Positions 33,585-63,199 are shown, counted from the first letter of the stretch. The stretch: 63,889 bases of DNA from Octopus bimaculoides (GCF_001194135.2 NC_068995.1:35520588-35584476); one strand, 5' to 3'. Notes: a model not told the origin generated them from the letters alone. A program made the numbers and translations.

Positions 33585-34577
33585 TTTATATATTCTGTCT
33601 TGATGCATGTAATTTGGTATTGTTTCGTAAGAAATAAAAGGTATATATTTGATACTAAATTCTATATCTATATATATCGACGGTTAACTTGTATATCGGA
33701 TATTTTCTCTTTGTTTTATCGACTCAGTCGACAGACAGCAGTTACATCAATGAGTTCATGGAAGACAGGAAAAAATATAACTTATTTTTGATATCCAATG
33801 TAAAGTGGATACGTAAACAACCACGAAAGGAAAAAGAGTAAATATTTTATGTCTGTTGAACTGAGATTATTGATTATTTAGTGTTTGTTTGTTACATGGT
33901 AATAATTTACCTCACGAGACAAAAATAAAAATGGGAATAGATCACACAATATATCGTAATCGAACAAAATAATGTGTTGTTATCTGTAAATACGTAGGGG
34001 GTGGCAAAAATAATAGAGTAGTCAGTATTATGAGACACCAAGGAGGAGGCTATTTTGGGATCTAACTAGGCTCTTACAATTTTAAGCTTCGTATCAGTAA
34101 GTTTTTATTCCTTGTATTTTCTTTGTATAACTATATTTCATTTAATGTAAAACAAATATTTGAACACATATACGTCATTTGAACAAAAATATTTTATTTT
34201 TAATGTTCATACACATCCTTGGAAAAGAGTTAAGAATATTACGTACGGTCATCCTGTTTCCTTTATAGGCTGAATCCAGCTCAAATATTTTATGTTTCTT
34301 ATTTAAAGAACATTAAGGTTTTCAATGCTATGCTTCCACATATTCCCTTGCTTTTAAATCTAAAATCGTCGTCTATGTTTATGTGTCTTTAGTGGTGAGT
34401 TGAGACACCTATTTTGATGAAAATTCTCTGAGCCCACTCAACTGTTAGATGTTCGTTAATTTATATATTCTGTCTTGATGCATGTAATTTGGTATTGTTT
34501 CGTAAGAAATAAAAGGTATATATTTGATACTAAATTCCATATCTATATATATCGACGGTTAACTTGTATATCGGATA
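33585..34577 (+). repeat. 118-bp direct duplication (33585-33702 and 34460-34577)
   Basis: One mismatch seen by manual comparison; offset 875. Confidence 0.93.
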
Positions 34578-36022
34578 AGATGCAAGGGGACTTTGGTGGG
34601 GATTTAGGGAAAAAAAGTGCGCCTTATATGTCATGTCGGAAAATACGGTAATTTCTGATTAATTGAAACTTTCTTATGGACTACAGCTAATATTCCTAAA
34701 GAATACAGAAGAGAACCCAGGTGGAAAAAAAATGATGACATCAACAGTCCGTGCTGCTATATTGAATGGTTAACCACAGCATTAAAATGTAAGGGAATAA
34801 TGATTAACACATTATTAAGACCTTATAAAAAACTATATCAAAATTTTTTACCTACATTCCAGCGATGAAACTTCGTAACATTGTTAGAAGCAAGCTTCTT
34901 GCAGATATATCTTAAATAATAAAAGCTAGAAAAGAACATATGCATACATATATATTAAAACCAGATATTTCCTCCGGTTCTAAAGATTCTGGTAACAGTA
35001 ATTGTGTGCAGCTGCAAAGGGGTGGGGATCCGAATGTATTGAACACTCTCTGACCTTTTGTGCGTACATCTTTGCCATTTCGGCAACCAACATCTTCAAT
35101 AAGAAGCAGTTCGGTGTTTTGAGTGATTACAGCCCTTGTGAGCATACATGTATACATTTATGTGCTTTTCCTACAGCATTAGAGGATTTTAGTTCTTATT
35201 TCTAGCAATGTAAGTGTCTTGACACACTTAGTCGCGTTTAAAAATAAGCAATACAATTAAGCATTAAAGATTAAAAATTAAGAATTAAAAATTAAGAATA
35301 AAAATTATACTTTGTAATATTAAGAATTAAAATTTATAAATTATACATTATAAATATGAATTAGTATATATATATATATATATCAATCATGTAAAGTATA
35401 TATCAAATACAGAATGTGAGATATAAGATTAAACATCAGAATAAAAATGTCTGTGTTTAAATGTGATATATAACAAGAAAATTGTTAGCTGACGCTCTTT
35501 GATAAGCTATTATGGTTGTCTAAGTTACAAATCTTAGCTTAACACTACCAAATACCACCACTGATTTCCACCTTCACCAGTATTGCCCATCATCAATAAT
35601 ACTAAGCCTACCGAAGGCCTGATCTTCAGCACATAAGATATAAGGGGACTTTGGTGGGGATTTAGGGGAAAAAAGAGCGCCTTATATGTCATGTCGGAAA
35701 ATACGGTAATTTCTGATTAATTGAAACTTTCTTATAGACTACAGCTAATATTCCTAAAGAATACAGAAGAGAACCCAGGTGGAAAAAAAATGATGACATC
35801 AACAGTCCGTGCTGTTATATTGAATGGTTAACCACAGCATTAAAATGTAAGGGAATAATGATTAACACATTATTAAGACCTTATGAAAAACTATATCAAA
35901 ATTTTTTACCTACATTCCAGCGATGAAACTTCGTAACATTGTTAGAAGCAAGCTTCTTGCAGATATATCTTAAATAATAAAAGCTAGAAAAGAACATATG
36001 CATACATATATATTAAAATCAG
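34575..36022 (+). repeat. ~390-bp direct duplication (34575-34964 and 35633-36022)
   Basis: Colinear at offset 1058 with about 7-8 substitutions and no indels. Confidence 0.93.
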
Positions 36023-36084: not shown

Positions 36085-36261
36085 GAGAAAGGGATTAAGT
36101 CGATTACATCGACCTCAGTGCGCAACTGGTACTTATTTAATCGACCCCGAAAGGATGAAAAGCAAGATCGACCTCGGCGGAATTTGAACTCAGAATGTAA
36201 CGGCAGAGGAAATACCGCGAAGCATTTCGCACGGCGTGCTAACGATTCTGCCAGCTCGCCG
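36085..36261 (-). mobile_element. SINE family A
   Basis: Minus strand: gcggcgagctggcagaatcgttagcacgccgtgcgaaatgctt...ttctgagttcaaattccgccgaggtcga. Confidence 0.9.
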
Positions 36262-36786: not shown

Positions 36787-37908
36787 ATGGAAGACAACCA
36801 GACGACAGAGTATTCCTACTTAAATAACAGTGTTTACCACCGCTATTCATGGCCTGTTGGTATTTTTAAAGAATTCTGTCCCGTAGCGCTCTATGTCGAC
36901 CGCTACGTTACAATAGTTTGGTATATCATTGGACTTTTTACAAACCCAATTTCAGCCTTTCTGTGGATGCAGCCACGTATCAGACGCAATAACTCTTCGG
37001 CAATCTATTTGGCTGCTTTATCAATAACTGACTTTATGTTCCTGTGGCTACATTTTATAAATGAACTACAAATAGCGTGGGGTATTTCAACTGTTGCTTA
37101 CACTGGAATATGTGAATTGTACAACTTCATCTACATGATCCCTCAGTATATGGCACCACTTATTGTTCTTGCTTTTACGGTAGAACGATGGATTGCCGTA
37201 TGTAAGCCATTCCAAAAAGAAAAATATTGTACTGTTAACAGAGCTATATATGTTGTTTGTGGACTTATCGTGACGTGTACGTCACTTGCTTCAATTCAGA
37301 TATACATTTGGTACTACGATGAAAAATTTCAAATTTGCACATATCGAGAAGGTCAGATTGAAAACTACAGTTTCACAATTATTTGGAATTGGTTAAGTGA
37401 GTTAACTATATTTGGTATTGTGCCGATTTTCGTGCTCCTTTTTAATATACAAGTAATTCGCGAAATTAGGAAGATTACAAAGTCTAATCCGATTCAAATC
37501 CCTTACCAGACAACGACATCAAACAGCAACGCTGCTTCAACTATAACTTTGTTGTCCATTTCTTTTTACTTGATCTTCACCACTCTTCCAGTAACTCTTG
37601 TGTTTGTTGTTGAAAGTAACATTCATTTAGGAAATTTTAACATGACAGATCAAGAAATCCGATCCGACCCGGTTTGGAACAGATATTTCACCTTCTTAGC
37701 AATTCGAAGATTTACTGAGGAACTATGCTTCTCACATTATGCATGCTATTTTTTTGTTTACTGTTTAACGGGGCCTCAGTTCAGGAGAGCCTTCATCTCT
37801 TATGTCCCTAGAAAGCTTTGTCCGGCAGTAAAATCTAAACATGTAGGATATACTTCCGTAGCAGGAAATGGAAGAACCGGAAATGAGACATGCACAACTT
37901 ACGTGTGA
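36787..37908 (+). CDS. Class A (rhodopsin-like) GPCR, FMRFamide/sex-peptide-receptor-like invertebrate peptide receptor group, 373 aa, CDS uninterrupted
   Basis: Seven hydrophobic segments; N-glycosylation sequons NQT and NNS; TM1 GLFTN; TM2 LAALSITD; ECL1 Cys (GICE) and ECL2 Cys (QICT); TM3 FTVERWIAVCKPF; TM5 Pro (IVP); TM6 TTLP; TM7 SHYACYFFVY then helix 8 (GPQFRRAF). No stops or frameshifts. The ORF-track start at 36676 lies in a GT repeat, so the ATG at 36787 is preferred. Confidence 0.95.
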   Translation: MEDNQTTEYSYLNNSVYHRYSWPVGIFKEFCPVALYVDRYVTIVWYIIGLFTNPISAFLWMQPRIRRNNSSAIYLAALSITDFMFLWLHFINELQIAWGISTVAYTGICELYNFIYMIPQYMAPLIVLAFTVERWIAVCKPFQKEKYCTVNRAIYVVCGLIVTCTSLASIQIYIWYYDEKFQICTYREGQIENYSFTIIWNWLSELTIFGIVPIFVLLFNIQVIREIRKITKSNPIQIPYQTTTSNSNAASTITLLSISFYLIFTTLPVTLVFVVESNIHLGNFNMTDQEIRSDPVWNRYFTFLAIRRFTEELCFSHYACYFFVYCLTGPQFRRAFISYVPRKLCPAVKSKHVGYTSVAGNGRTGNETCTTYV

Positions 37909-39474: not shown

Positions 39475-39890
39475 AAGACAGAGCGATGTAAGAGTTGTTA
39501 ACGGCATGCGACAAAGTGCTTAGTAGCATTTCTTTCTTCTGACTCCATACGTTCTGAGTTCAAATCCTACCGAAGTCGACTTTATTTTCCATCCTTTTAG
39601 AGCAGAGTGTAGATAAATTAAGTAACAGTTGTACACTGGGTATGATGTAATCGACGTCTACCCTTTCCACCAAATTTCGGGCCTTGTACCTATATTAGAT
39701 AGAATGTTTTTGCGCGCTGCGAGGTGGCAGGATCGTTACCGCACCGGACAAAATGCTTATGGACATTTCGTCCATCTTTATGTTTTAATTTAACATTCCC
39801 CCGAGGTTGACTTTGCCATTCATCCTTTCGTAATTGATGAAATAAGTAGCAGTGGAGCACTGGGGTCGATATGATCGACTATCCTCCTCA
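39475..39890 (+). mobile_element. Two tandem diverged SINE family A copies (39475-39703 and 39712-39890)
   Basis: Both carry the acgttctgagttcaaat/gaggttgactttgcc...aaataagta...cactggggtcga pattern. Confidence 0.75.
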
Positions 39891-41154
39891 CATACATATA
39901 GAAACATACAATAAGTATACATATATGCAATATGCACCCGTATATTCAAACACATAAATTCACGTAATAGTATTTCTTTGCAAGCATGTCAAAACATTTT
40001 TTTTATTTCTTTGTGATAAAATTCGGTCTGTGGATCCATGAATATCAATAGTCATATAGAAACTCGTAACTGAAGATCATGTATATAATTATTCACTTTC
40101 CAATGTATTTGGATTTAATTAGAAAAGTATAAGTAATATAGCTAATCATATGAGACAATGCTGTATCAGTGTGCCATTTTAAAGAGAAATTTGTTTCTTC
40201 CCAAATTGCGAACAGCAATCCAATAAAGAACACTTAGTATCAACTAGTTTAATCCGCTATCCGCAAAATTATAAAATGGATCATATCTATAAATTTGGAA
40301 AGTTTAATTGGAAAAGAAATAAACATTTCACAAATACTAAAATTGTGTAGCTAAAATAATGTAAAAGACAAGTAACAGTGTACAAAAAAATCCGGAGCTA
40401 AATAATAAGTAAATATTCAAAGAGTAATCCGAAAAACATTCGGGAAGCTGAATATAACTACTGGATTAAACAGATATCTCTTGCTTCAGAGAAACAAAAA
40501 CAAATGCAAAATCCCCAGGCTGATATCACAGAAACAAATTATTATATATTGCTGTAGGTTAAGCGAGATTTCAAACCATTTTCTTTTCAATCCCATATCC
40601 TCATTCAGGATTGATAAAAATAGGATTTCCGGAAAATTATAACATGTCAAATAGTGATGTATTGACCATTTCGACATAAATGGTCAATGATAGAAGTCAG
40701 CATATCTTACAGAGAAGTGGCAAGACAATTTCAACGGTGAAGTAAAGAAAAATAACATTATATATCAAGCTATTCATATCGAAATGCCAAGGAAAATGAC
40801 ATTCTGTTTGCCAAATAATAGCATTATAGAACTGCATTGTCAACTGGATGTTTGCATTTCCTCGTCTCGCATCACTGAATGCAAACAATAATCCTTAGCA
40901 TTGAAACTATTCTTCCATATTATCGTGTAGGTCCAATCCATCTCCGGTAAGAAATCTGAGATATCGGTTAGCTAGTTAATATTTATAACAATATATGTAG
41001 GTGTACGTATATGGAAGTCAGTGTAGATAAATAAAGTTTAGCAGCAGGGGGTCACTGCCTATCATTTATAGATGTAATTTTCATATTATTTACAAGCACA
41101 GTCATCTGTTAGAGTACACACACAACACATATACATATATGGATACACACGCTT

Positions 41155-42363: not shown

Positions 42364-42576
42364 AAGGAGCAAGCTGGCATAATCGATAGCACGCCGGAAA
42401 AATGCTTAGCGGCATTTTGTCCGTCTTTACGTTCTGAGTTCAAATTCCGCCGAGGTCTACTTTACCTTTCATCCTTCCAGGCTCGATTAAACAAATACAA
42501 GTTGAACACTGGGGTCAGTGATAGCGATATATCCCATCACAGAAATGTTGGACTTTGCGCCAAACTTTGAAACTAA
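42364..42576 (+). mobile_element. SINE family A
   Basis: gctggcataatcgatagcacgccggaaaaatgcttagcggcattttgtccgtctttacgttctgagttcaaattccgccgagg. Confidence 0.9.
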
Positions 42577-45576: not shown

Positions 45577-45778
45577 TTGGTTTCAAATTTTCGTATAACG
45601 CCAGCAATTTCGAGGAGTGAGTAAGCAGATTACATCGACCTCAACTGGTACTTATTTCATTGACCCCAAAAGGATGAAAGACAAAGTTGACCTCAGCAGA
45701 ATCTGAACTCAGAGCGTAAAGCGAACGAAATGGCGCTGAACATTTTGCCCAGCGTGTTAACAATTCTGCCAGCACGCC
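45577..45778 (-). mobile_element. SINE family A
   Basis: Minus strand: ggcgtgctggcagaattgttaacacgctgggcaaaatg...ctctgagttcagattctgctgaggtcaactttgtctttcatcc. Confidence 0.85.
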
Positions 45779-48434: not shown

Positions 48435-49596
48435 GGCTTGGGTAAAACAATGGAAACACCTAGCAGCATAGCATCATAATTTTGAAATATCAATAACACC
48501 CGCATAAGATTGTTTGTTTTGATTTTGGGATTTATTATTAGTGTTGCTTAATATGTTTTGTTAAAATTGCTGTTTCTTTTCAGATATCATCCGAAAAAGG
48601 TAATTAAAATTCATTACAATGACAGACCTATCGGACTTTCAAAGAGGTCAAATTGTTGGTGCTCTTAATGGCAGGTACTAACATTATGAAAATGGACGAA
48701 ACGTGTGGAAACGGACTCTTACACGAGTTGTTAGAAAGGATCACAAAAGTACAGCTCCCAAAATTACAGCAGATCTTAATGACCACCTCGAGAACCCAGT
48801 TTCCACAAAACCTGTTCGCCAGGAGCTGCACAAGGCCGGATATAACTGGAGGGCTGCAATTAGAAAACTACTACTTTCAAAACCAAACGTTGCAGAGCGT
48901 TTAGAGTGGAGTAAGAACCTACAGAATTGGTCCCTAGAGCAATAGGAGAATGCTATTTTCCCGTACGAGTCATCCTATACCTTATTTCCGACCGCCGGTC
49001 GAGTATACATATGGGGACAGCCAAAAGAAGCTTTTGACCCAGACTGCCTTCTTACAACTCTTAAACATGGAGGATCTGTAATAATCTGGGGGGCTATGTC
49101 TTGGAAAACTGCCGGCTCAATGGTTTCCCTTCATGACAGAATTAATAGTCAAGACTATTTAATCATTTTATCTCATAAAATTCATCTTACGTTTGCGGAA
49201 CTGTTTCCGGTGGGAAACGCAATCTTTCAGGATGATAATCCACCAATTCACACAGCTAAAGTTGTTACTGAATGGCAAAGGCACGAGGAACATTCTAGTG
49301 AAGTTGAACATCTTATCTGGCCACCACAGTCCCCAGATCTCAATATTATTGAACATTTATGGTGCATTTTAGAAAAACAAGTAAGGAGTCGATATCCTCC
49401 ACCATCATCACTACAAGAACTGGAGACGGTTTTAGCTGAAGAATGGACAAATATTCCTTTGGAAACAATTCAAACTTTGTATAAGTCCATACCTCATAGA
49501 ATTCAAGCTGTAATTACTGCCAAAGCGGTCCTATCTCCATATAAAATAAATTTGTTTGAAATTTTAAGGTGTTTCCATTATTTTGTCAAACCCCTG
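48432..49596 (+). mobile_element. Tc1-like transposon with both TIRs (1165 bp), copy c
   Basis: TIRs cagggcttgggtaaaacaatggaaacacc and ggtgtttccattattttgtcaaacccctg, with TA TSDs at 48430-31 and 49597-98. ATG at 48619 (MTDLSDFQRGQIVGA), then IFQDDNPPIH...WPPQSPDLNIIEHLW. The transposase is disrupted. Confidence 0.95.
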
Positions 49597-49658
49597 TATA
49601 TACATATATACACACATACATGCATACATACATACATACATACATACATACATACATA

Positions 49659-49877
49659 CGAGGGGGAGGGCTAAATAGTTCCTGGCGTTAAGGGCATCAC
49701 GAAAGGCCTGGTTGGGGGCCCAACATTCCGAGTTCTTTTACAGGGCTTAAAAAAACTGACGGGCTGCAGCAATAAGTGTGTATATCTGAAAAGGAAATAT
49801 GTTGAATAGAATCATGATTCACTGATCCTCCTGTATTCTCTTTAACCCTAAGCCAGAGACATTTCAGCACTCCCTCG
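49659..49877 (+). mobile_element. Mariner-derived MITE
   Basis: TIRs cgagggggagggctaaatagttcctggc and gccagagacatttcagcactccctcg, TA-flanked. The interior retains remnants of the last transposase codons (…K..EYVE*). Confidence 0.88.
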
Positions 49878-57381: not shown

Positions 57382-58491
57382 TTATTTTCGGATAAAAACC
57401 TTCGAGAATGCTATGTAAAGCTCGACTACAGTTATTGGTTCCTGATGTCATCATACAGTAGAAATACACATGATACTGGATGTACTTCAGGAATTCCATA
57501 TTGTCCGTACACCTTATATAAATGATTCAGGGACAGAAAAGGGAATTCACAAGTTTCTTTATTCAAAACTAATACAATTGTTTCGACTCGTTCTCGCAAC
57601 TATATGACGTTGTGCAGATCAATTCACTTGCATTACACGTGCAGCTGTAGAATATGCCTCCTTGGGTGACTTTTTAAACAAGTTTCTTATTATTTCACTT
57701 TTTTCTCGCTATTTCACTTTGCCTTATTATAATGTATAGCAGGGTAGATGTTGCATTTTAGCTGTTCTCAGACGAAGAGGGACATGAAACAATTACCGTC
57801 AAAAAATAAATTAAATACACCGATAAAAAATCCATAGATAAATAAAAAAAAATATACATGAAACCAAAATAAAAATAAAAGATGCATAAATAAGATATAC
57901 ATGAAATCAAAATAAATAGAAATACAAAAAATGTATTAAAGGGACCCGTTTGGTTATCATTTATCATTAGAATGATTATGAAGATGAAAGAATTAGATAG
58001 ACCAGTTAGGGTAGACGTCATGTCGACTCGAAAGAAAGGAAATTAGATTTATAAAGGTATGTTTTAGAGGCGATAAACATATGCAAAATGACCAATCACC
58101 TATTGCACTGTGTAACACGATTTTTGCCTTTGGGTGGCAACTGTTATTTCCTATTTGCTTACCCCTGGAAAGTATGAAAAGTAGTTAATATTTCGTTCAA
58201 TCTTTGCTTTTGTTACATTTATTCAGAGCCCCAAAAATCCCTCTCGGCACATGGCAATGATGCTCCCACACTACTTCTGCTCATGACCAGAAATGCACAT
58301 ATCGTCGGCTACTAAGGGACATGCTCAAGTGGTTATAGTCAAGGAACTGACAAGCAAATCTGCGGTACTGAGTAGAATATTTTCTATAACGATATTTCTG
58401 AAATTTATTTATTCCCATGGGAAAACTGTCAAATGTGAACATTCTCGTTCACGCAAATAAGGAACAAAACGACGTATGATTCAAAAGTAGC

Positions 58492-58556
58492 ATTCTTGAA
58501 ACTTTTAGAAACTTCTCGAAAGTTCTTGAACCTTCGAGAAAGTTCTAGAAAATTCT
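58492..58556. promoter_or_regulatory. Heat-shock-element array (13 alternating nTTCn/nGAAn pentamers)
   Basis: aTTCttGAAacTTTtaGAAacTTCtcGAAagTTCttGAAccTTCgaGAAagTTCtaGAAaaTTCt: strict 10-bp phase, 12 of 13 cores perfect. Confidence 0.65.
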
Positions 58557-59136
58557 GCTTCAGCAACTCAGCGCAGAAACTGTCTGAAATATAATGGAAA
58601 ATAAGCAGTTTGAAACCATTGATGTCCAAGTCGCAAAAGCAAGGTTTGAAGGGAACAGTAGTCATTTCCTTTAATTTCTAGATAGAAGCAAATATGAAAT
58701 ATCGCTCACTGACCAAAGTCAAAAAAGATATAATAAATTTCGTTACACAATGTTATCACTTCACTATCTTCTAACCGTTTTTTATTTTCTATTTTCTTCC
58801 TAACTTTATTTTTTAGTCTATCTAATACTTCCATCCTCATAATCCTTCTTATGGGAATTTATAGCCAAACGAATCACTTTATCTCAGATTTTTTAAAAAC
58901 AGTTAAACGTATGTAAGAAGAATGTCTATATCTATATGTAATAAAAGAATATATATNNNNNNNNNNNNNNNNNNNNNNNNNNNNNNNNNNNNNNNNNNNN
59001 NNNNNNNNNNNNNNNNNNNNNNNNNNNNNNNNNNNNNNNNNNNNNNNNNNNNNNNNNNNNNNNNNNNNNNNNNNNNNNTATATGGATATTATTGTTTACA
59101 ATAATATCAAATGGAATATCATGAAGCAAAAAATTA

Positions 59137-59500
59137 TTAATTAATAGTTAAGGGTATTATAGGTAGTACCGGCAAGCTAAAGATAGCAGTCAAAAGACAA
59201 CTACAACCACAAATTTTCACTGATACACATTATTTAAAGTTGGGGGAATGAACAAGAATTCTAAGCCCCGCACCAATAGCGAAAAGAATCGTAAATTGAA
59301 AAGCCAGACATACCCGTATCGTCACGACTTCAAACTTTGTGGAAGTGCCACTTAGTTCCCCTCAGCGAGTCTCACTGACCTAAGGGTCATAGATCTTGCC
59401 CATCTCAACAAATGTGCGCGATGTCCGTTTCTAATGCCGCGGCAAATTTAAAAAGGTGATCGGAGTGAATAATAAATTAGTACCCTTAATTATTAATTAA
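59137..59500. mobile_element. MITE-like element with ~24-bp TIRs, TA-flanked
   Basis: ttaattaatagttaagggtattat versus attagtacccttaattattaattaa (reverse complement, 3 mismatches). The interior is more GC-rich than the flanks. Confidence 0.55.
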
Positions 59501-60306: not shown

Positions 60307-61495
60307 TTAGGTCATTAAGAATTAAATGTCTGATTTTCTTATGCACCAAGTTTAACAGTCATTAACTCTATTGTTTTTCCTAAAAATTCTTTGTTTTACA
60401 ACATTGAAGAGTTACATCATCACATTTCGAAATGCAATTCATGGTGTCTGATTATATTGTGAGTTTTCTCTAGTAAATCAATCTGTGTGAACTCATGGAT
60501 AGATTAAAAATCCGTGTTGTTTGTGAATATGAGTTCCGTTGTGGAACCAATGTATCCTAAACAGCTTCAAACATTAATGAGGCGTTTGGTGAAGACGTGG
60601 CGAATGAGCGCACTGTACGTCGATGCTTTGAGAAGTTCCGATCTGATGACTTTACTCTGGAAAATCAGCCTCATGGTAGACCTGAGACCAAGGTGGATAA
60701 TGATAAGCGGGAAAACTGTAGCGGAAGCGGATACATCACAAACTACGCGCGAGTTAGCAGCTAGGTTTGATGTTTCGATTCCAACTGTATCGGACCATCT
60801 GAAACAAGGTAAAGAAGCTGGACACGTAGGTACCACACGAACTGAACGTACATCAAATGACACGTCGTCTTGAAACTTGCTGTTCTTTGCTGCCACAGCG
60901 ACGAAGTGTCAAATCACAATCCAAAACCGAATATTCACCAAAAAATTTAATAGTATTTGCTTGGTGGTCCAGCGCTGGTGTCATCTACTACAGCTTCATG
61001 AGACCTGGTAAGTCATTTATAGCGGATGTATACATCAACCAATTGGGTGGAATGATGGGTGAACTTGCAAATAAAAAAAACCGAGATTGGTCAATAGAGA
61101 CAAGCCAATTCCCTTGCAAGACAATACTCGGCTACATGTTGCACAAAGAACGCTAGTCAAGTTACAGGAACTGAACTTGGAAGTACTCTGTCGTCCACTA
61201 TATTCACCAAACCTTGCACCAACTGACTATCACGTTTTCCAGGCATTAAACTGCTTTTTGTAAGGAAAAAACTTCAAACTTCAAACTTAAAGAAGATGCG
61301 AAAATAGCCTTACATGATTTCATCGCCTCTTGCTCTCCAGAATTCTACACTGCCGACATAATTAAGCTACTGATAAAATGCAAAATTGTGTTGATAATTT
61401 AGGTGCACACTTTGATTAACTGCAATGCTTTTTGTTGAGATAAAGTAAAATAAACTTTTAGTTCAAAATCGGACATTTCATTCTTAATGACCTGG
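60307..61495 (+). mobile_element. Mariner transposon, near full length (1189 bp), pseudogenised
   Basis: TIRs ttaggtcattaagaattaaatgtctgatttt and aaaatcggacatttcattcttaatgacctgg, with TA TSDs. YEFRCG, NERTVRRCFEKFRS, WWSSAGVIYYSF, QDNTRLH and YSPNLAPTDYH motifs. Confidence 0.93.
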
Positions 61496-63007: not shown

Positions 63008-63199
63008 CAGGGCGGTGAGCTAGCAGCATCGTTAACGGCATTTCGTTCATCTTTCTGTACTGAGTTAAAATTCCGCCGAGGCCGACTGTCCCTTTCATGC
63101 TTTCGGGATCGATAACTTAAGTACCAGTGAAACACTGCGGTCGATGTAGTCGACTTAATCCCCTCCCCCAAGCAGCCCTTGTGGCAAAAATTTGAAATC

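What the first reader, a model, noticed from the sequence alone, without database searches (positions are those of the whole stretch)
58492..58556. Orphan, near-perfect 13-pentamer heat-shock-element array
Seen: six consecutive TTCnnGAA decamers plus a final TTC in exact 10-bp register. The spacer bases vary (tt, ta, tc, tt, ga, ta) while the cores are conserved (12/13), which is unlike a slippage microsatellite. Established: HSF trimers bind alternating nGAAn pentamers, and 13 could hold about 4 trimers cooperatively, as strong as or stronger than hsp70 promoters. Helitron-borne HSE arrays are known to put genes under heat-shock control in nematodes. Inference: with no hsp gene in the window, this may be a TE-delivered stress enhancer acting on the GPCR ~21 kb away or on a gene beyond the window, or a heat-inducible TE promoter.
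Basis: partly seen in the sequence, partly recalled or inferred. Interest (0 to 1): 0.75.

Follow-up and report, generated by a model that had tools for sequence, protein, structure and literature searches.

The report
Heat-shock-element-like repeat inside an octopus retroposon
The perfect-looking array of heat-shock-factor binding motifs is real, but it is not an orphan: it is a 10-bp internal tandem repeat carried by a small subfamily of a dispersed octopus retroposon. Nothing available shows that it acts as a heat-shock switch.

Summary
Positions 58493-58557 carry 13 alternating TTC/GAA pentamers in exact 5-bp register, 12 of them perfect, and nothing similar occurs elsewhere in the window.

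It is not orphan. The array lies inside a poly(A)-tailed, SINE-like retroposon copy (58102-58737, + strand). Its core has about 10^4 genomic copies and its 3' tail about 10^3.

Most copies of this subfamily join 58395 directly to 58553. This copy carries an extra 157 bp: a low-copy piece (58401-58491) plus the array.

The array itself occurs in tens of copies (up to roughly 100-200 by crude depth ratios) in at least three, probably four, Octopus species. It always sits directly upstream of the same 3' tail, behind a different 5' flank (…CCAGAACGTTCTAGAA), and with 10- or 30-bp length variants.

The mosaic at this locus is also present in two sister species, so the insertion is old.

- Among paralogs, core bases vary about as much as spacers; G/C content predicts variability better.
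- In the family consensus, two of the four "n" positions are invariant, asymmetrically about the dyads.
- No TATA box is conserved, no transcript starts nearby, and no hsp gene is near.

Best reading: a retroposon-internal minisatellite that could bind HSF, with function unproven. Interest is low to moderate.

The parts
58492..58557 (.). HSE-like 10-bp tandem array: 13 alternating nTTCn/nGAAn pentamers. The last TTCTG (58553-58557) is also the first 5 nt of the shared retroposon tail.
   Evidence: Sequence; TRF periods 10/20/30; motif enrichment. Multicopy in four runs covering three species (A, B, C): word depth 930-5400 against a single-copy baseline of 20-60 (one search adds organism D). 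Folds as a hairpin in RNA, -21.5 kcal/mol, z=-2.27.
58102..58400 (+). Body of a SINE-like non-autonomous retroposon copy, with a sharp family 5' boundary at 58102-58106. No tRNA-like head was detected.
   Evidence: Read and contig depth rises abruptly at 58102-58106, and the loose ends before it have no consensus. ARAGORN and Rfam found nothing.
58206..58387 (+). Hyper-abundant core segment shared with a much larger repeat family, whose members mostly continue with a different tail (GCTGTAGCCCATCTTTTATACC...).
   Evidence: Raw-read depth of about 12,000-14,000 from 1.93 Gb of reads sampled from one run. 4492 reads diverge at 58382 with a common alternative continuation.
58401..58491 (.). 'Piece X': low-copy filler between the retroposon body and the array. 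Part of it (58418-58494) belongs to a separate family of about 1-9 copies with different flanks.
   Evidence: Single-copy depth in organism A. 1-9 contigs in relatives, with different continuations. Absent from normal family copies, which join 58395 to 58553 (148 reads, 5-bp overlap TTCTG).
58553..58713 (+). Retroposon 3' tail, shared by the SINE-like family (about 10^3 copies) and by the array-bearing subfamily.
   Evidence: Depth about 75,000 against a baseline of about 50 in X1. The continuation GCTTCAGCAACTCAGCGCTGAATCTGTCTG follows both kinds of copy. The family consensus ends ...ACTTACTGACC followed by poly(A).
58714..58737 (+). Degenerate A-rich tail of this copy (AAAGTCAAAAAAGATATAATAAA).
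   Evidence: Sequence. Paralogs have pure poly(A) at this point (loose ends behind 58701, 58718 and 58726).
57923..58002 (.). Left arm of a single-copy inverted repeat that brackets the retroposon. The retroposon appears to have landed in the loop of an older foldback.
   Evidence: blastn, 80% over 66 nt; the repeat finder I1, 80 nt at 76%. Depth is single-copy. RNA reads show A>G at 57969 and 57982.
58816..58895 (.). Right arm of the same inverted repeat.

Best explanation
The array is an internal 10-bp (higher-order 30-bp) minisatellite of a non-LTR retroposon family of Octopus.

One repeat unit (NTTCTNGAAA) happens to spell the heat-shock-element core, so tandem duplication automatically yields a long, perfectly phased HSE-like array. 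The array lies directly upstream of a roughly 160-nt 3' tail. A small array-bearing subfamily (tens of copies, with 5' flank ...GCCATCTATGTTGCCAGAACGTTCTAGAA) shares that tail with an abundant SINE-like family (about 10^3 copies). It is therefore copied through RNA and spread by retroposition.

The window copy is a chimera: SINE-like body + 91 bp of unrelated low-copy DNA + array + tail + A-rich tail. It probably arose by template switching or recombination at the TTCTG junction. It became fixed before this species split from two sister species and has since drifted at about the neutral rate.

It would very probably bind HSF trimers if accessible. Nothing indicates that it controls a host gene or a transcript here.

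**Shown:** TE context, copy numbers, the 157-bp extra segment, orthology, and the paralog and ortholog variation patterns.
**Inferred:** minisatellite origin, the template-switch mechanism, and lack of function.
For: 1. **The flanks are highly repeated.** Contig word depth in X1 is about 17,000-160,000 on both flanks, against a baseline of about 55. In raw reads the core reaches about 14,000.
2. **Family boundaries.** The 5' boundary is sharp at 58102-58106 and the 3' end is poly(A).
3. **Extra segment.** 148 reads join 58395 to 58553, so the 157 bp is extra in this copy.
4. **The array is multicopy.** The sum of contig word depths over the array is 930-5400 against a single-copy baseline of about 20-60, which gives crude estimates of tens up to roughly 100-200 copies. 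These copies are always followed by the tail and mostly preceded by one different consensus flank. That flank joins at 58492, 58508 or 58523, giving unit-number variants of 10 and 30 bp.
5. **Orthology.** Orthologous mosaic contigs exist in two other species: 58340-58528 with 12 differences, and 58356-58523 with 8.
6. **Paralog variability (58522-58555).** Core 4.2% against spacer 7.7% (p=0.09). G/C against A/T gives p=0.0025. The critical C of TTC and G of GAA vary 9.1% against 7.7% for spacers (p=0.58).
7. **Consensus units.** They vary only at positions 1 and 6; the 'n' positions 5 and 10 are fixed. This is asymmetric about both dyads and not what a symmetric HSF trimer would select.
8. **No conserved TATA box.** The window's TATAAT is private to this copy; the family has G at 58591 in about 90% of reads.
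9. **No RNA start at the array.** Array-containing RNA reads are about as rare, relative to tail reads, as array copies are relative to tail copies in DNA (4 against about 50-80 reads).
10. **Gene context.** The only real gene in the window is a GPCR 21 kb away; the rest are TE fragments.
Against: - Within the array the TTC/GAA cores are significantly better kept than unit positions 1 and 6 (Fisher p=0.0003 for this copy, p=0.0025 for the consensus).
- Within base classes, paralog cores are 1.6-3 times less variable than spacers. Register shifts between length variants inflate apparent spacer variation, so this is confounded.
- The first 32-37 nt of the array are identical in the two sister-species orthologs, while the flanks differ by 6-10%. 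This is only suggestive: P=0.07-0.18.
- No heat-stress, HSF-binding or chromatin data could be examined, so function is not excluded.
- The parent element of the array-bearing subfamily was not recovered, so 'internal minisatellite of a retroposon' rests on 30-nt flank consensuses and depth profiles.
Confidence: 0.55

Rival explanations
1. The array is a functional HSF-binding module of the retroposon family. It would make the element, or nearby promoters, heat-inducible, as ONSEN LTRs do in Arabidopsis and Helitron HSE clusters do in Caenorhabditis. This copy would be a fossil of such a stress-responsive element and might retain enhancer activity.
For: - 13 phased pentamers fit about 4 HSF trimers, and the consensus units TTCTAGAA are the ideal palindromic HSE.
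- The specific order of units is retained across paralogs and species rather than being scrambled by slippage, because high-depth contigs match the window at most positions.
- The 5' flank of the array-bearing family adds three further pentamers (GAAcgTTCtaGAA).
- Cores are kept better than positions 1 and 6.
- The first half of the array is identical in the orthologs.
- TE-borne tandem HSEs that wire GPCR and collagen genes into the heat-shock response are documented (PMC6927752).
Against: - The array sits in the 3' part of a poly(A) retroposon, so it cannot be the upstream promoter of its own RNA.
- No TATA box is conserved downstream.
- The critical G/C of the cores is among the most variable positions in paralogs.
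- The conservation pattern is asymmetric about the dyads.
- The three upstream pentamers are 1 nt out of register (GAA-A-TTC), judging from 30-nt flank consensuses.
- Only 1.5-6% of tail-bearing copies carry the array, so it was not needed for amplification of the main family.
- There is no excess of array-bearing RNA.
Confidence: 0.25
2. This particular copy has been exapted as a host stress enhancer. It would act on the GPCR at 36787-37908 or on a gene beyond the window.
For: - The insertion is fixed and shared by three species.
- The first half of the array is unchanged between species.
- The GPCR is under strong purifying selection: 26 synonymous and 0 non-synonymous differences from O. 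vulgaris.
- Helitron HSEs in C. elegans drive GPCR genes (PMC6927752).
Against: - The array is 21 kb from the GPCR, across TE-rich DNA.
- Whole-array divergence from the putative species-B ortholog is 3/66, including a core G>A at 58548, which is about neutral.
- The two substitutions private to this lineage make it less like the consensus.
- There is no discrete RNA unit on either side.
- Conservation of the first half is not significant.
Confidence: 0.07
3. The array matters as nucleic-acid structure, not as a protein-binding site. Its self-complementary units would form a long hairpin in the element's RNA, next to the 3' tail that the partner reverse transcriptase recognises, or a cruciform or slippage-prone structure in DNA.
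For: - The array folds into a single long hairpin: -21.5 kcal/mol, z=-2.27, with 5 of 200 shuffles as good.
- It shows inverted symmetry: 58498-58525 against 58528-58555 are 79% complementary.
- Its position is immediately 5' of the conserved tail.
- Strand-asymmetric conservation (positions 5 and 10 fixed, 1 and 6 free) fits a strand-specific or repeat-history constraint better than a symmetric protein.
- From my own knowledge: 3' stem-loops are recognition elements in several stringent LINE/SINE pairs.
Against: - The z-score is modest, and any palindromic repeat folds like this.
- The abundant SINE-like family amplifies with the same tail but without the array.
- Length variants of 10 and 30 bp are tolerated.
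- No covariation test was possible.
Confidence: 0.1

Closest known systems
Helitron-borne tandem HSE clusters in Caenorhabditis (Hac-HSEs; Garrigues et al. 2019, PMC6927752)
   Same: Dense, overlapping tandem HSEs are carried inside a multicopy transposable element and dispersed around the genome. A GPCR gene is in the neighbourhood here, and GPCR genes are the class reported as targets in worms.
   Different: The carrier here is a poly(A) non-LTR retroposon, not a Helitron. Only tens of copies carry the array. No HSF binding, Pol II recruitment or heat induction has been shown. The nearest gene is 21 kb away. The worm paper reported that high-density HSE clusters did not occur outside Helitrons in the other species it examined.
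ONSEN (ATCOPIA78) heat-activated LTR retrotransposon of Arabidopsis (PMC8376061; HSEs in the LTR from my own knowledge)
   Same: It is a retroelement whose own sequence contains HSF-binding motifs.
   Different: ONSEN's HSEs lie in the LTR promoter upstream of the transcription start, and heat activation has been shown experimentally. Here the array is internal, 3'-proximal and untested.
HSF1-bound satellite repeats (human satellite III and other non-coding HSF1 targets; review PMC9032817)
   Same: These are tandemly repeated non-coding DNA matching the HSF recognition sequence that can recruit HSF1 away from hsp genes.
   Different: Satellite III forms megabase pericentromeric blocks of GGAAT-type repeats. 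This is a 66-bp array inside a dispersed retroposon copy.
Internal or 3'-terminal short tandem repeats of non-LTR retroposons (for example the 8-bp repeats at CR1-type LINE 3' ends; my own knowledge, not tested here)
   Same: A short tandem repeat is embedded in the 3' region of a retroposon and propagated with it, with unit-number variation among copies.
   Different: The unit here is a 10-bp palindrome-like HSE core. It lies upstream of, not at, the 3' terminus. The partner LINE was not identified.
Canonical hsp70/hsp promoter HSEs
   Same: They share the alternating nGAAn pentamers in 5-bp register. This array is longer than the typical 3-8 pentamers of hsp promoters (textbook knowledge).
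   Different: There is no downstream hsp gene, no conserved TATA box, no transcript start, and the context is a TE.

Membership tests
Heat-shock element (HSF-binding site) | At least 3 contiguous inverted nGAAn pentamers in 5-bp register | tested here: met
   13 pentamers, 12 perfect; 10 consecutive perfect cores from 58508.
Heat-shock element (HSF-binding site) | Bound by HSF in vitro or in vivo | not testable with these tools
   No ChIP, CUT&Tag or EMSA data are reachable.
Heat-shock element (HSF-binding site) | Confers heat-inducible transcription on an adjacent transcription unit | tested here: inconclusive
   No transcript start appears near the array in 3 raw RNA-seq runs or in RNA contigs, only sparse read-through. 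The run conditions are coded and unknown, so heat stress was probably not sampled.
Heat-shock element (HSF-binding site) | Located in the promoter or proximal upstream region of a stress-responsive gene | tested here: not met
   No hsp or other gene is adjacent. The only Pfam-supported gene is a 7tm_1 GPCR 21 kb away. The TATA-like box is private to this copy.
Heat-shock element (HSF-binding site) | Purifying selection on GAA/TTC cores relative to spacers across copies and orthologs | tested here: inconclusive
   Paralogs: core 4.2% against spacer 7.7% (p=0.09); critical G/C 9.1% against 7.7%. Orthologs: 0/37 in the first half (P about 0.07); 3/66 overall, including 1 core change.
Helitron-borne HSE cluster | The array lies inside a Helitron (5' TC, 3' CTRR with subterminal hairpin, insertion between A and T, no TSD) | tested here: not met
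   The host element has a defined 5' end at 58102-58106 (ATTGCACTG...) and a poly(A) 3' end in paralogs.
Non-LTR retroposon / SINE | Dispersed multicopy family with a defined 5' end and a 3' A-rich tail | tested here: met
   About 10^3 copies of the tail and about 10^4 of the core. Loose ends give a poly(A) consensus after ...ACTGACC.
Non-LTR retroposon / SINE | Pol III promoter head derived from tRNA, 5S or 7SL | tested here: not met
   ARAGORN found none. Rfam gave only chance-level hits. The element is therefore called 'SINE-like', not a proven SINE.
Non-LTR retroposon / SINE | Target-site duplication flanking the copy | tested here: inconclusive
   Only a weak 7-bp candidate was seen (ATCACCT at 58094-58100 against ATCACTT at 58755-58761). 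An unexplained 18-nt inverted match joins 58106-58123 and 58735-58752.
Non-LTR retroposon / SINE | 3' tail shared with a partner LINE | tested here: inconclusive
   The tail is shared with a second family that has a different upstream sequence (the array-bearing copies). That family could not be extended beyond 30 nt or shown to encode a reverse transcriptase.
Slippage-type mini/microsatellite (VNTR) | Head-to-tail units whose number varies between copies or alleles | tested here: met
   TRF period 10/20/30. Paralogs lack one 10-bp unit or a 30-bp block, because the same 5' flank joins at 58492, 58508 and 58523. Allelic variation at this locus was not tested; the X1 contig is identical to the window over 58371-58521.

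The most novel reading that the evidence does not exclude
Octopus genomes harbour a non-LTR retroposon subfamily whose consensus carries a 13-16-pentamer ideal HSE array. Through it, heat-shock-factor-responsive enhancers would be scattered around the genome. This would be a cephalopod, retroposon-based counterpart of the Helitron HSE network of Caenorhabditis, with this fixed, partly conserved copy as one such stress-responsive site.
Probability: 0.15. Interest if true: 0.6.

Novelty: new member of a known kind. Interest (0 to 1): 0.3.

Why it matters
If the array-bearing copies bind HSF and respond to heat, they would be the first TE-dispersed heat-shock enhancers reported in a mollusc, and the first carried by a non-LTR retroposon. 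That would matter for how TE-rich cephalopod genomes rewire stress responses. The array gives a compact, testable sequence for this: about 66 bp in tens of copies.

If the evidence is right in leaning the other way, the finding is a cautionary case. A tandem repeat whose unit contains TTCnnGAA automatically mimics a super-strong HSE, so motif perfection alone is not evidence of regulatory function.

Tried and rejected
1. **DNA-transposon/MITE reading.** It rested on an apparent terminal inverted repeat (58106-58123 against 58735-58752). I rejected it as the main model because paralogs end in poly(A) at about 58713-58726 and depth drops there. The inverted match remains unexplained.
2. **'Unique insertion' reading of the array.** After one search showed zero raw-read depth on 58414-58517, I took the array to be unique. 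Searches overturned this by showing tens of array copies with another 5' flank.
3. **Other family copies in sequence held here.** blastn of 58000-58900 and of the flank and tail consensuses against the window and the 21-kb O. vulgaris locus found none.
4. **Exact scan of JGI metagenome contigs for the tail:** 0 hits.
5. **Protein search with the 78-aa minus-strand ORF running through tail and array,** to fish out paralogous copies: no candidate.
6. **Rfam and ARAGORN on 57500-59300:** only chance-level hits and no tRNA.
8. **One Python fuzzy-regex search** timed out.
9. **O. vulgaris ortholog.** I could not fetch it from the chromosome assembly, because only protein-anchored look-ups with flanks of up to 10 kb are possible and the nearest called gene is 21 kb away.
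10. **Bacterial promoter/terminator scanner:** not used, as it is irrelevant to an animal genome.

Full report
**1.

Positions 58492-58557 read aTTCttGAAa cTTTtaGAAa cTTCtcGAAa gTTCttGAAc cTTCgaGAAa gTTCtaGAAa aTTCtg.
- That is 13 alternating TTC/GAA pentamers in exact 5-bp register. Twelve are perfect; the exception is TTT at 58503-05.
- TRF reports the array with periods 10, 20 and 30.
- The two-HSE pattern TTCNNGAANNTTCNNGAA, with up to 1 mismatch, hits five overlapping times. All hits are here, against 0.29 expected, and no shuffle reached 5.
- Exact three-pentamer HSEs occur 8 times in the window, all here, and not at all in 21 kb of a related genome.
- Deviations from the unit consensus fall outside the cores: 1/39 against 10/27, Fisher p=0.0003.

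**2. The organism and the neighbourhood**

- The window is AT-rich animal DNA with N gaps, many microsatellites and TE fragments (RVT_1, DDE_3, mariner Transposase_1). It has one Pfam-supported gene, a rhodopsin-type GPCR at 36787-37908.
- That GPCR protein is encoded identically on OX597828.1 of GCA_951406725.2. This is the Octopus vulgaris reference.
- The DNA around it is only 87-93% identical to the window. The CDS differs at 26 sites, all synonymous.
- The window therefore comes from a different Octopus species. It is probably O. bimaculoides, judging from 2015 genome and RNA runs; this is an inference. Neutral divergence from O. vulgaris is about 0.1.
- No hsp gene is present.

**3. The array is inside a retroposon copy**

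Laying DNA contigs and raw reads of the same species on 57620-58950 shows single-copy depth outside 58102-58745 and enormous depth inside.
- In contig word depth (X1, baseline about 55), both flanks of the array reach 17,000-160,000.
- In raw reads, the core 58206-58387 reaches about 12,000-14,000 from 1.93 Gb of reads sampled from one run. The 5' part and the 3' part (58553-58725) reach about 400-800.
- The family has a sharp 5' boundary at 58102-58106. Upstream of it the paralogs share no consensus.
- At the 3' end the paralogs continue ...ACTTACTGACC followed by poly(A).
- The window copy has a degenerate A-rich tail at 58714-58737.

It is therefore a + strand, non-autonomous, poly(A) retroposon. 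I call it SINE-like because no tRNA-type head was found. Most members of the huge core family carry a different tail, diverging at 58382.

**4. This copy carries 157 extra bases**

- In the subfamily with this tail, 148 raw reads join 58395 directly to 58553, with a 5-bp overlap TTCTG.
- The normal sequence is ...GCTATAACGATAT-TTCTG-CTTCAGCAACTCAG....
- The window copy has, between the two TTCTG, a 91-bp 'piece X' (58401-58491) plus the array.
- Piece X is single-copy in this species. In relatives, part of it (58418-58494) belongs to a repeat of about 1-9 copies with other flanks.

**5. The array is not orphan**

At 80% or more identity the array has summed word depths of 930-5400, against single-copy baselines of 20-60, in four runs covering three species. 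One search shows the same in a fourth organism. This gives crude estimates of tens up to roughly 100-200 copies.
- These copies are followed by the same tail.
- Most are preceded by one shared but different flank, TGCCATCTATGTTGCCAGAACGTTCTAGAA. That flank adds three more pentamers, apparently 1 nt out of register.
- The flank joins the array at 58492, 58508 or 58523. Paralogs therefore differ by one 10-bp unit or one 30-bp block.
- High-depth contigs agree with the window at nearly all array positions. The exceptions are 58531 (family A, window C) and 58536 (family T, window G).
- The family consensus is ATTCTTGAAA CTTTTAGAAA CTTCTCGAAA GTTCTTGAAA CTTCTAGAAA GTTCTAGAAA ATTCTG.
- The array-bearing copies are about 1.5-6% of tail-bearing copies.

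The simplest reading is that two retroposon families share one 3' tail, as SINE/LINE partners do, and that the array is an internal repeat of the rarer one. The window copy is a chimera of both plus filler. Template switching during reverse transcription would explain this, but that mechanism is an inference.

**6. Age and orthologs**

- Contigs from two other Octopus species reproduce the same mosaic: 58340-58528 with 12 differences, and 58356-58523 with 8. The insertion therefore predates their split. The O. vulgaris/O. bimaculoides split is put at 13-33 Myr in PMC13282606.
- All differences in those contigs lie at or before 58459. The first 32-37 nt of the array are identical.
- Given the flank rates, this has P of about 0.07-0.18 and is not significant.
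- The contig that probably carries the second half in species B differs at 58531, 58536 and 58548. The last is a core G>A.
- That makes 3/66 overall, about the neutral rate, with 1 core change and 2 non-core.

**7. Selection tests on paralogs**

Per-position variant shares could be read for 58522-58555 in four runs.

| Comparison | Values | p |
|---|---|---|
| Core against spacer | 4.2% against 7.7% | 0.09 |
| G/C against A/T positions | – | 0.0025 |
| C of TTC / G of GAA against spacers | 9.1% against 7.7% | 0.58 |

- Base identity is the stronger predictor, matching the C>T/G>A-dominated spectrum of the family.
- The C of TTC and G of GAA make the key HSF contact. Two of the TTC cytosines reach about 20% variant share.
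- The remaining excess at spacers is at positions 1 and 6, exactly where units differ from each other. Ungapped alignment of length variants inflates it.
- In the consensus, only positions 1 and 6 vary; the other two 'n' positions (5 = T, 10 = A) are fixed.
- Position 5 is the dyad partner of 6, and position 10 is the partner of 1. A symmetric HSF trimer should therefore treat them alike. The asymmetry points to repeat history or a strand-specific constraint.

**8. Promoter and RNA evidence**

- The TATAAT 35 bp downstream (58590-95) is private to this copy; about 90% of family reads have G at 58591.
- Three deep RNA-seq runs, each sampled at about 6%, give almost no reads on the unique parts and no start near the array.
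- At 90% or more identity, 50-80 reads per run cover the tail. Only 4 reads, from a paralog, enter the array. This mirrors the DNA copy ratio.
- Two older RNA assemblies contain low-depth contigs that read through piece X and the array.
- Regions 1-2 kb up- and downstream are equally patchily represented.
- This looks like sparse pervasive or intronic RNA. Run conditions are hidden, so heat induction could not be assessed.

**9. Structure**

The array is self-complementary and folds into one hairpin: -21.5 kcal/mol, z=-2.27. This is expected for palindromic units and only modestly unusual.

**10. Chance**

- A 10-bp tandem repeat needs just one unit to contain TTCnnGAA. At this base composition, 0.34% of random units do so in some register.
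- The window alone has about a dozen period-10 TRF hits.
- HSE-like arrays are therefore expected somewhere in a 2.7-Gb, repeat-rich genome.

**11. Verdict**

- 'Orphan' is refuted and 'TE-delivered' is confirmed, although the carrier is a non-LTR retroposon, not a Helitron or an LTR element.
- 'Stress enhancer' is untested, and the indirect evidence leans neutral.
- The best explanation is a retroposon-internal minisatellite that mimics, and could physically act as, a strong HSE (0.55).
- Rivals: a functional HSF module of the TE family (0.25); an RNA/DNA hairpin role (0.10); an exapted host enhancer at this locus (0.07).
- The closest known system is the Helitron HSE clusters of Caenorhabditis (PMC6927752). 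It resembles them in kind (TE-borne tandem HSEs) but fails Helitron membership and lacks any functional evidence.
- I found no paper linking octopus TEs with heat-shock elements.

Noticed in passing
window 57923-58002 and 58816-58895: A single-copy inverted repeat (80 nt, 76-80% complementary) brackets the retroposon, as if the retroposon had landed in the loop of an older foldback. The only RNA-seq reads on the left arm carry A>G at 57969 and 57982 (3 of 3 reads). This looks like ADAR editing of a + sense RNA forming double-stranded RNA with the right arm.
   Followed up: partly
window 36787-37908 (+), L001 10001-11122: The rhodopsin-family GPCR (7tm_1) is 100% identical in protein to its O. 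vulgaris ortholog despite 26 nucleotide differences, all synonymous (dS about 0.1). This indicates very strong purifying selection. No other gene is called within 10 kb either side in O. vulgaris.
   Followed up: partly
window 58106-58123 and 58735-58752: There is an 18-nt inverted match (CACTGTGTAACACGATTT / AAATTTCGTTACACAATG) at the retroposon's 5' end and just beyond its A-rich tail. It is unexplained: it could be chance, or the target site could have resembled the element's 5' end.
   Followed up: partly
window 58958-59088: An assembly gap (run of N) lies 400 bp downstream of the array, flanked by (TA)n-like sequence. What lies there is unknown and could matter for any downstream-promoter idea.
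   Followed up: no
window 60514-61263 (+): This is a decayed mariner-type transposase: an HTH fragment and Pfam Transposase_1 (E=5e-13), split over several frames.
   Followed up: partly
window 5878-6005, 39548-39596, 39779-39906, 42428-42555, 63054-63181 (and inverse 3934-4031, 36130-36227, 45649-45746): Many copies of a different SINE with a tRNA-like B-box-type motif (…GAGTTCAAATTCCGCCGAGGTCGACTTTGCC…), often next to (TTA)n/(AAT)n microsatellites.
   Followed up: no
window 8632-9443, 12927-13507, 48783-49597: Three copies (two direct, one inverted; 81-91% identical) of a Tc1/mariner-like element with DDE_3 transposase fragments (ORFs 8857-9276 and 49096-49674).
   Followed up: no
window 33585-33702 / 34460-34577 and 34575-34874 / 35633-35932: Very recent local duplications (98-99% identical, spaced 875 and 1058 bp) lie just upstream of the GPCR. 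They are either a tandem segmental duplication or an assembly artefact.
   Followed up: no
window 58673: A>G appears in all RNA reads here, but the same G is the family-consensus base in DNA reads (about 90%). It is therefore a paralog signal, not RNA editing, which is a caution for editing calls inside repeats.
   Followed up: yes
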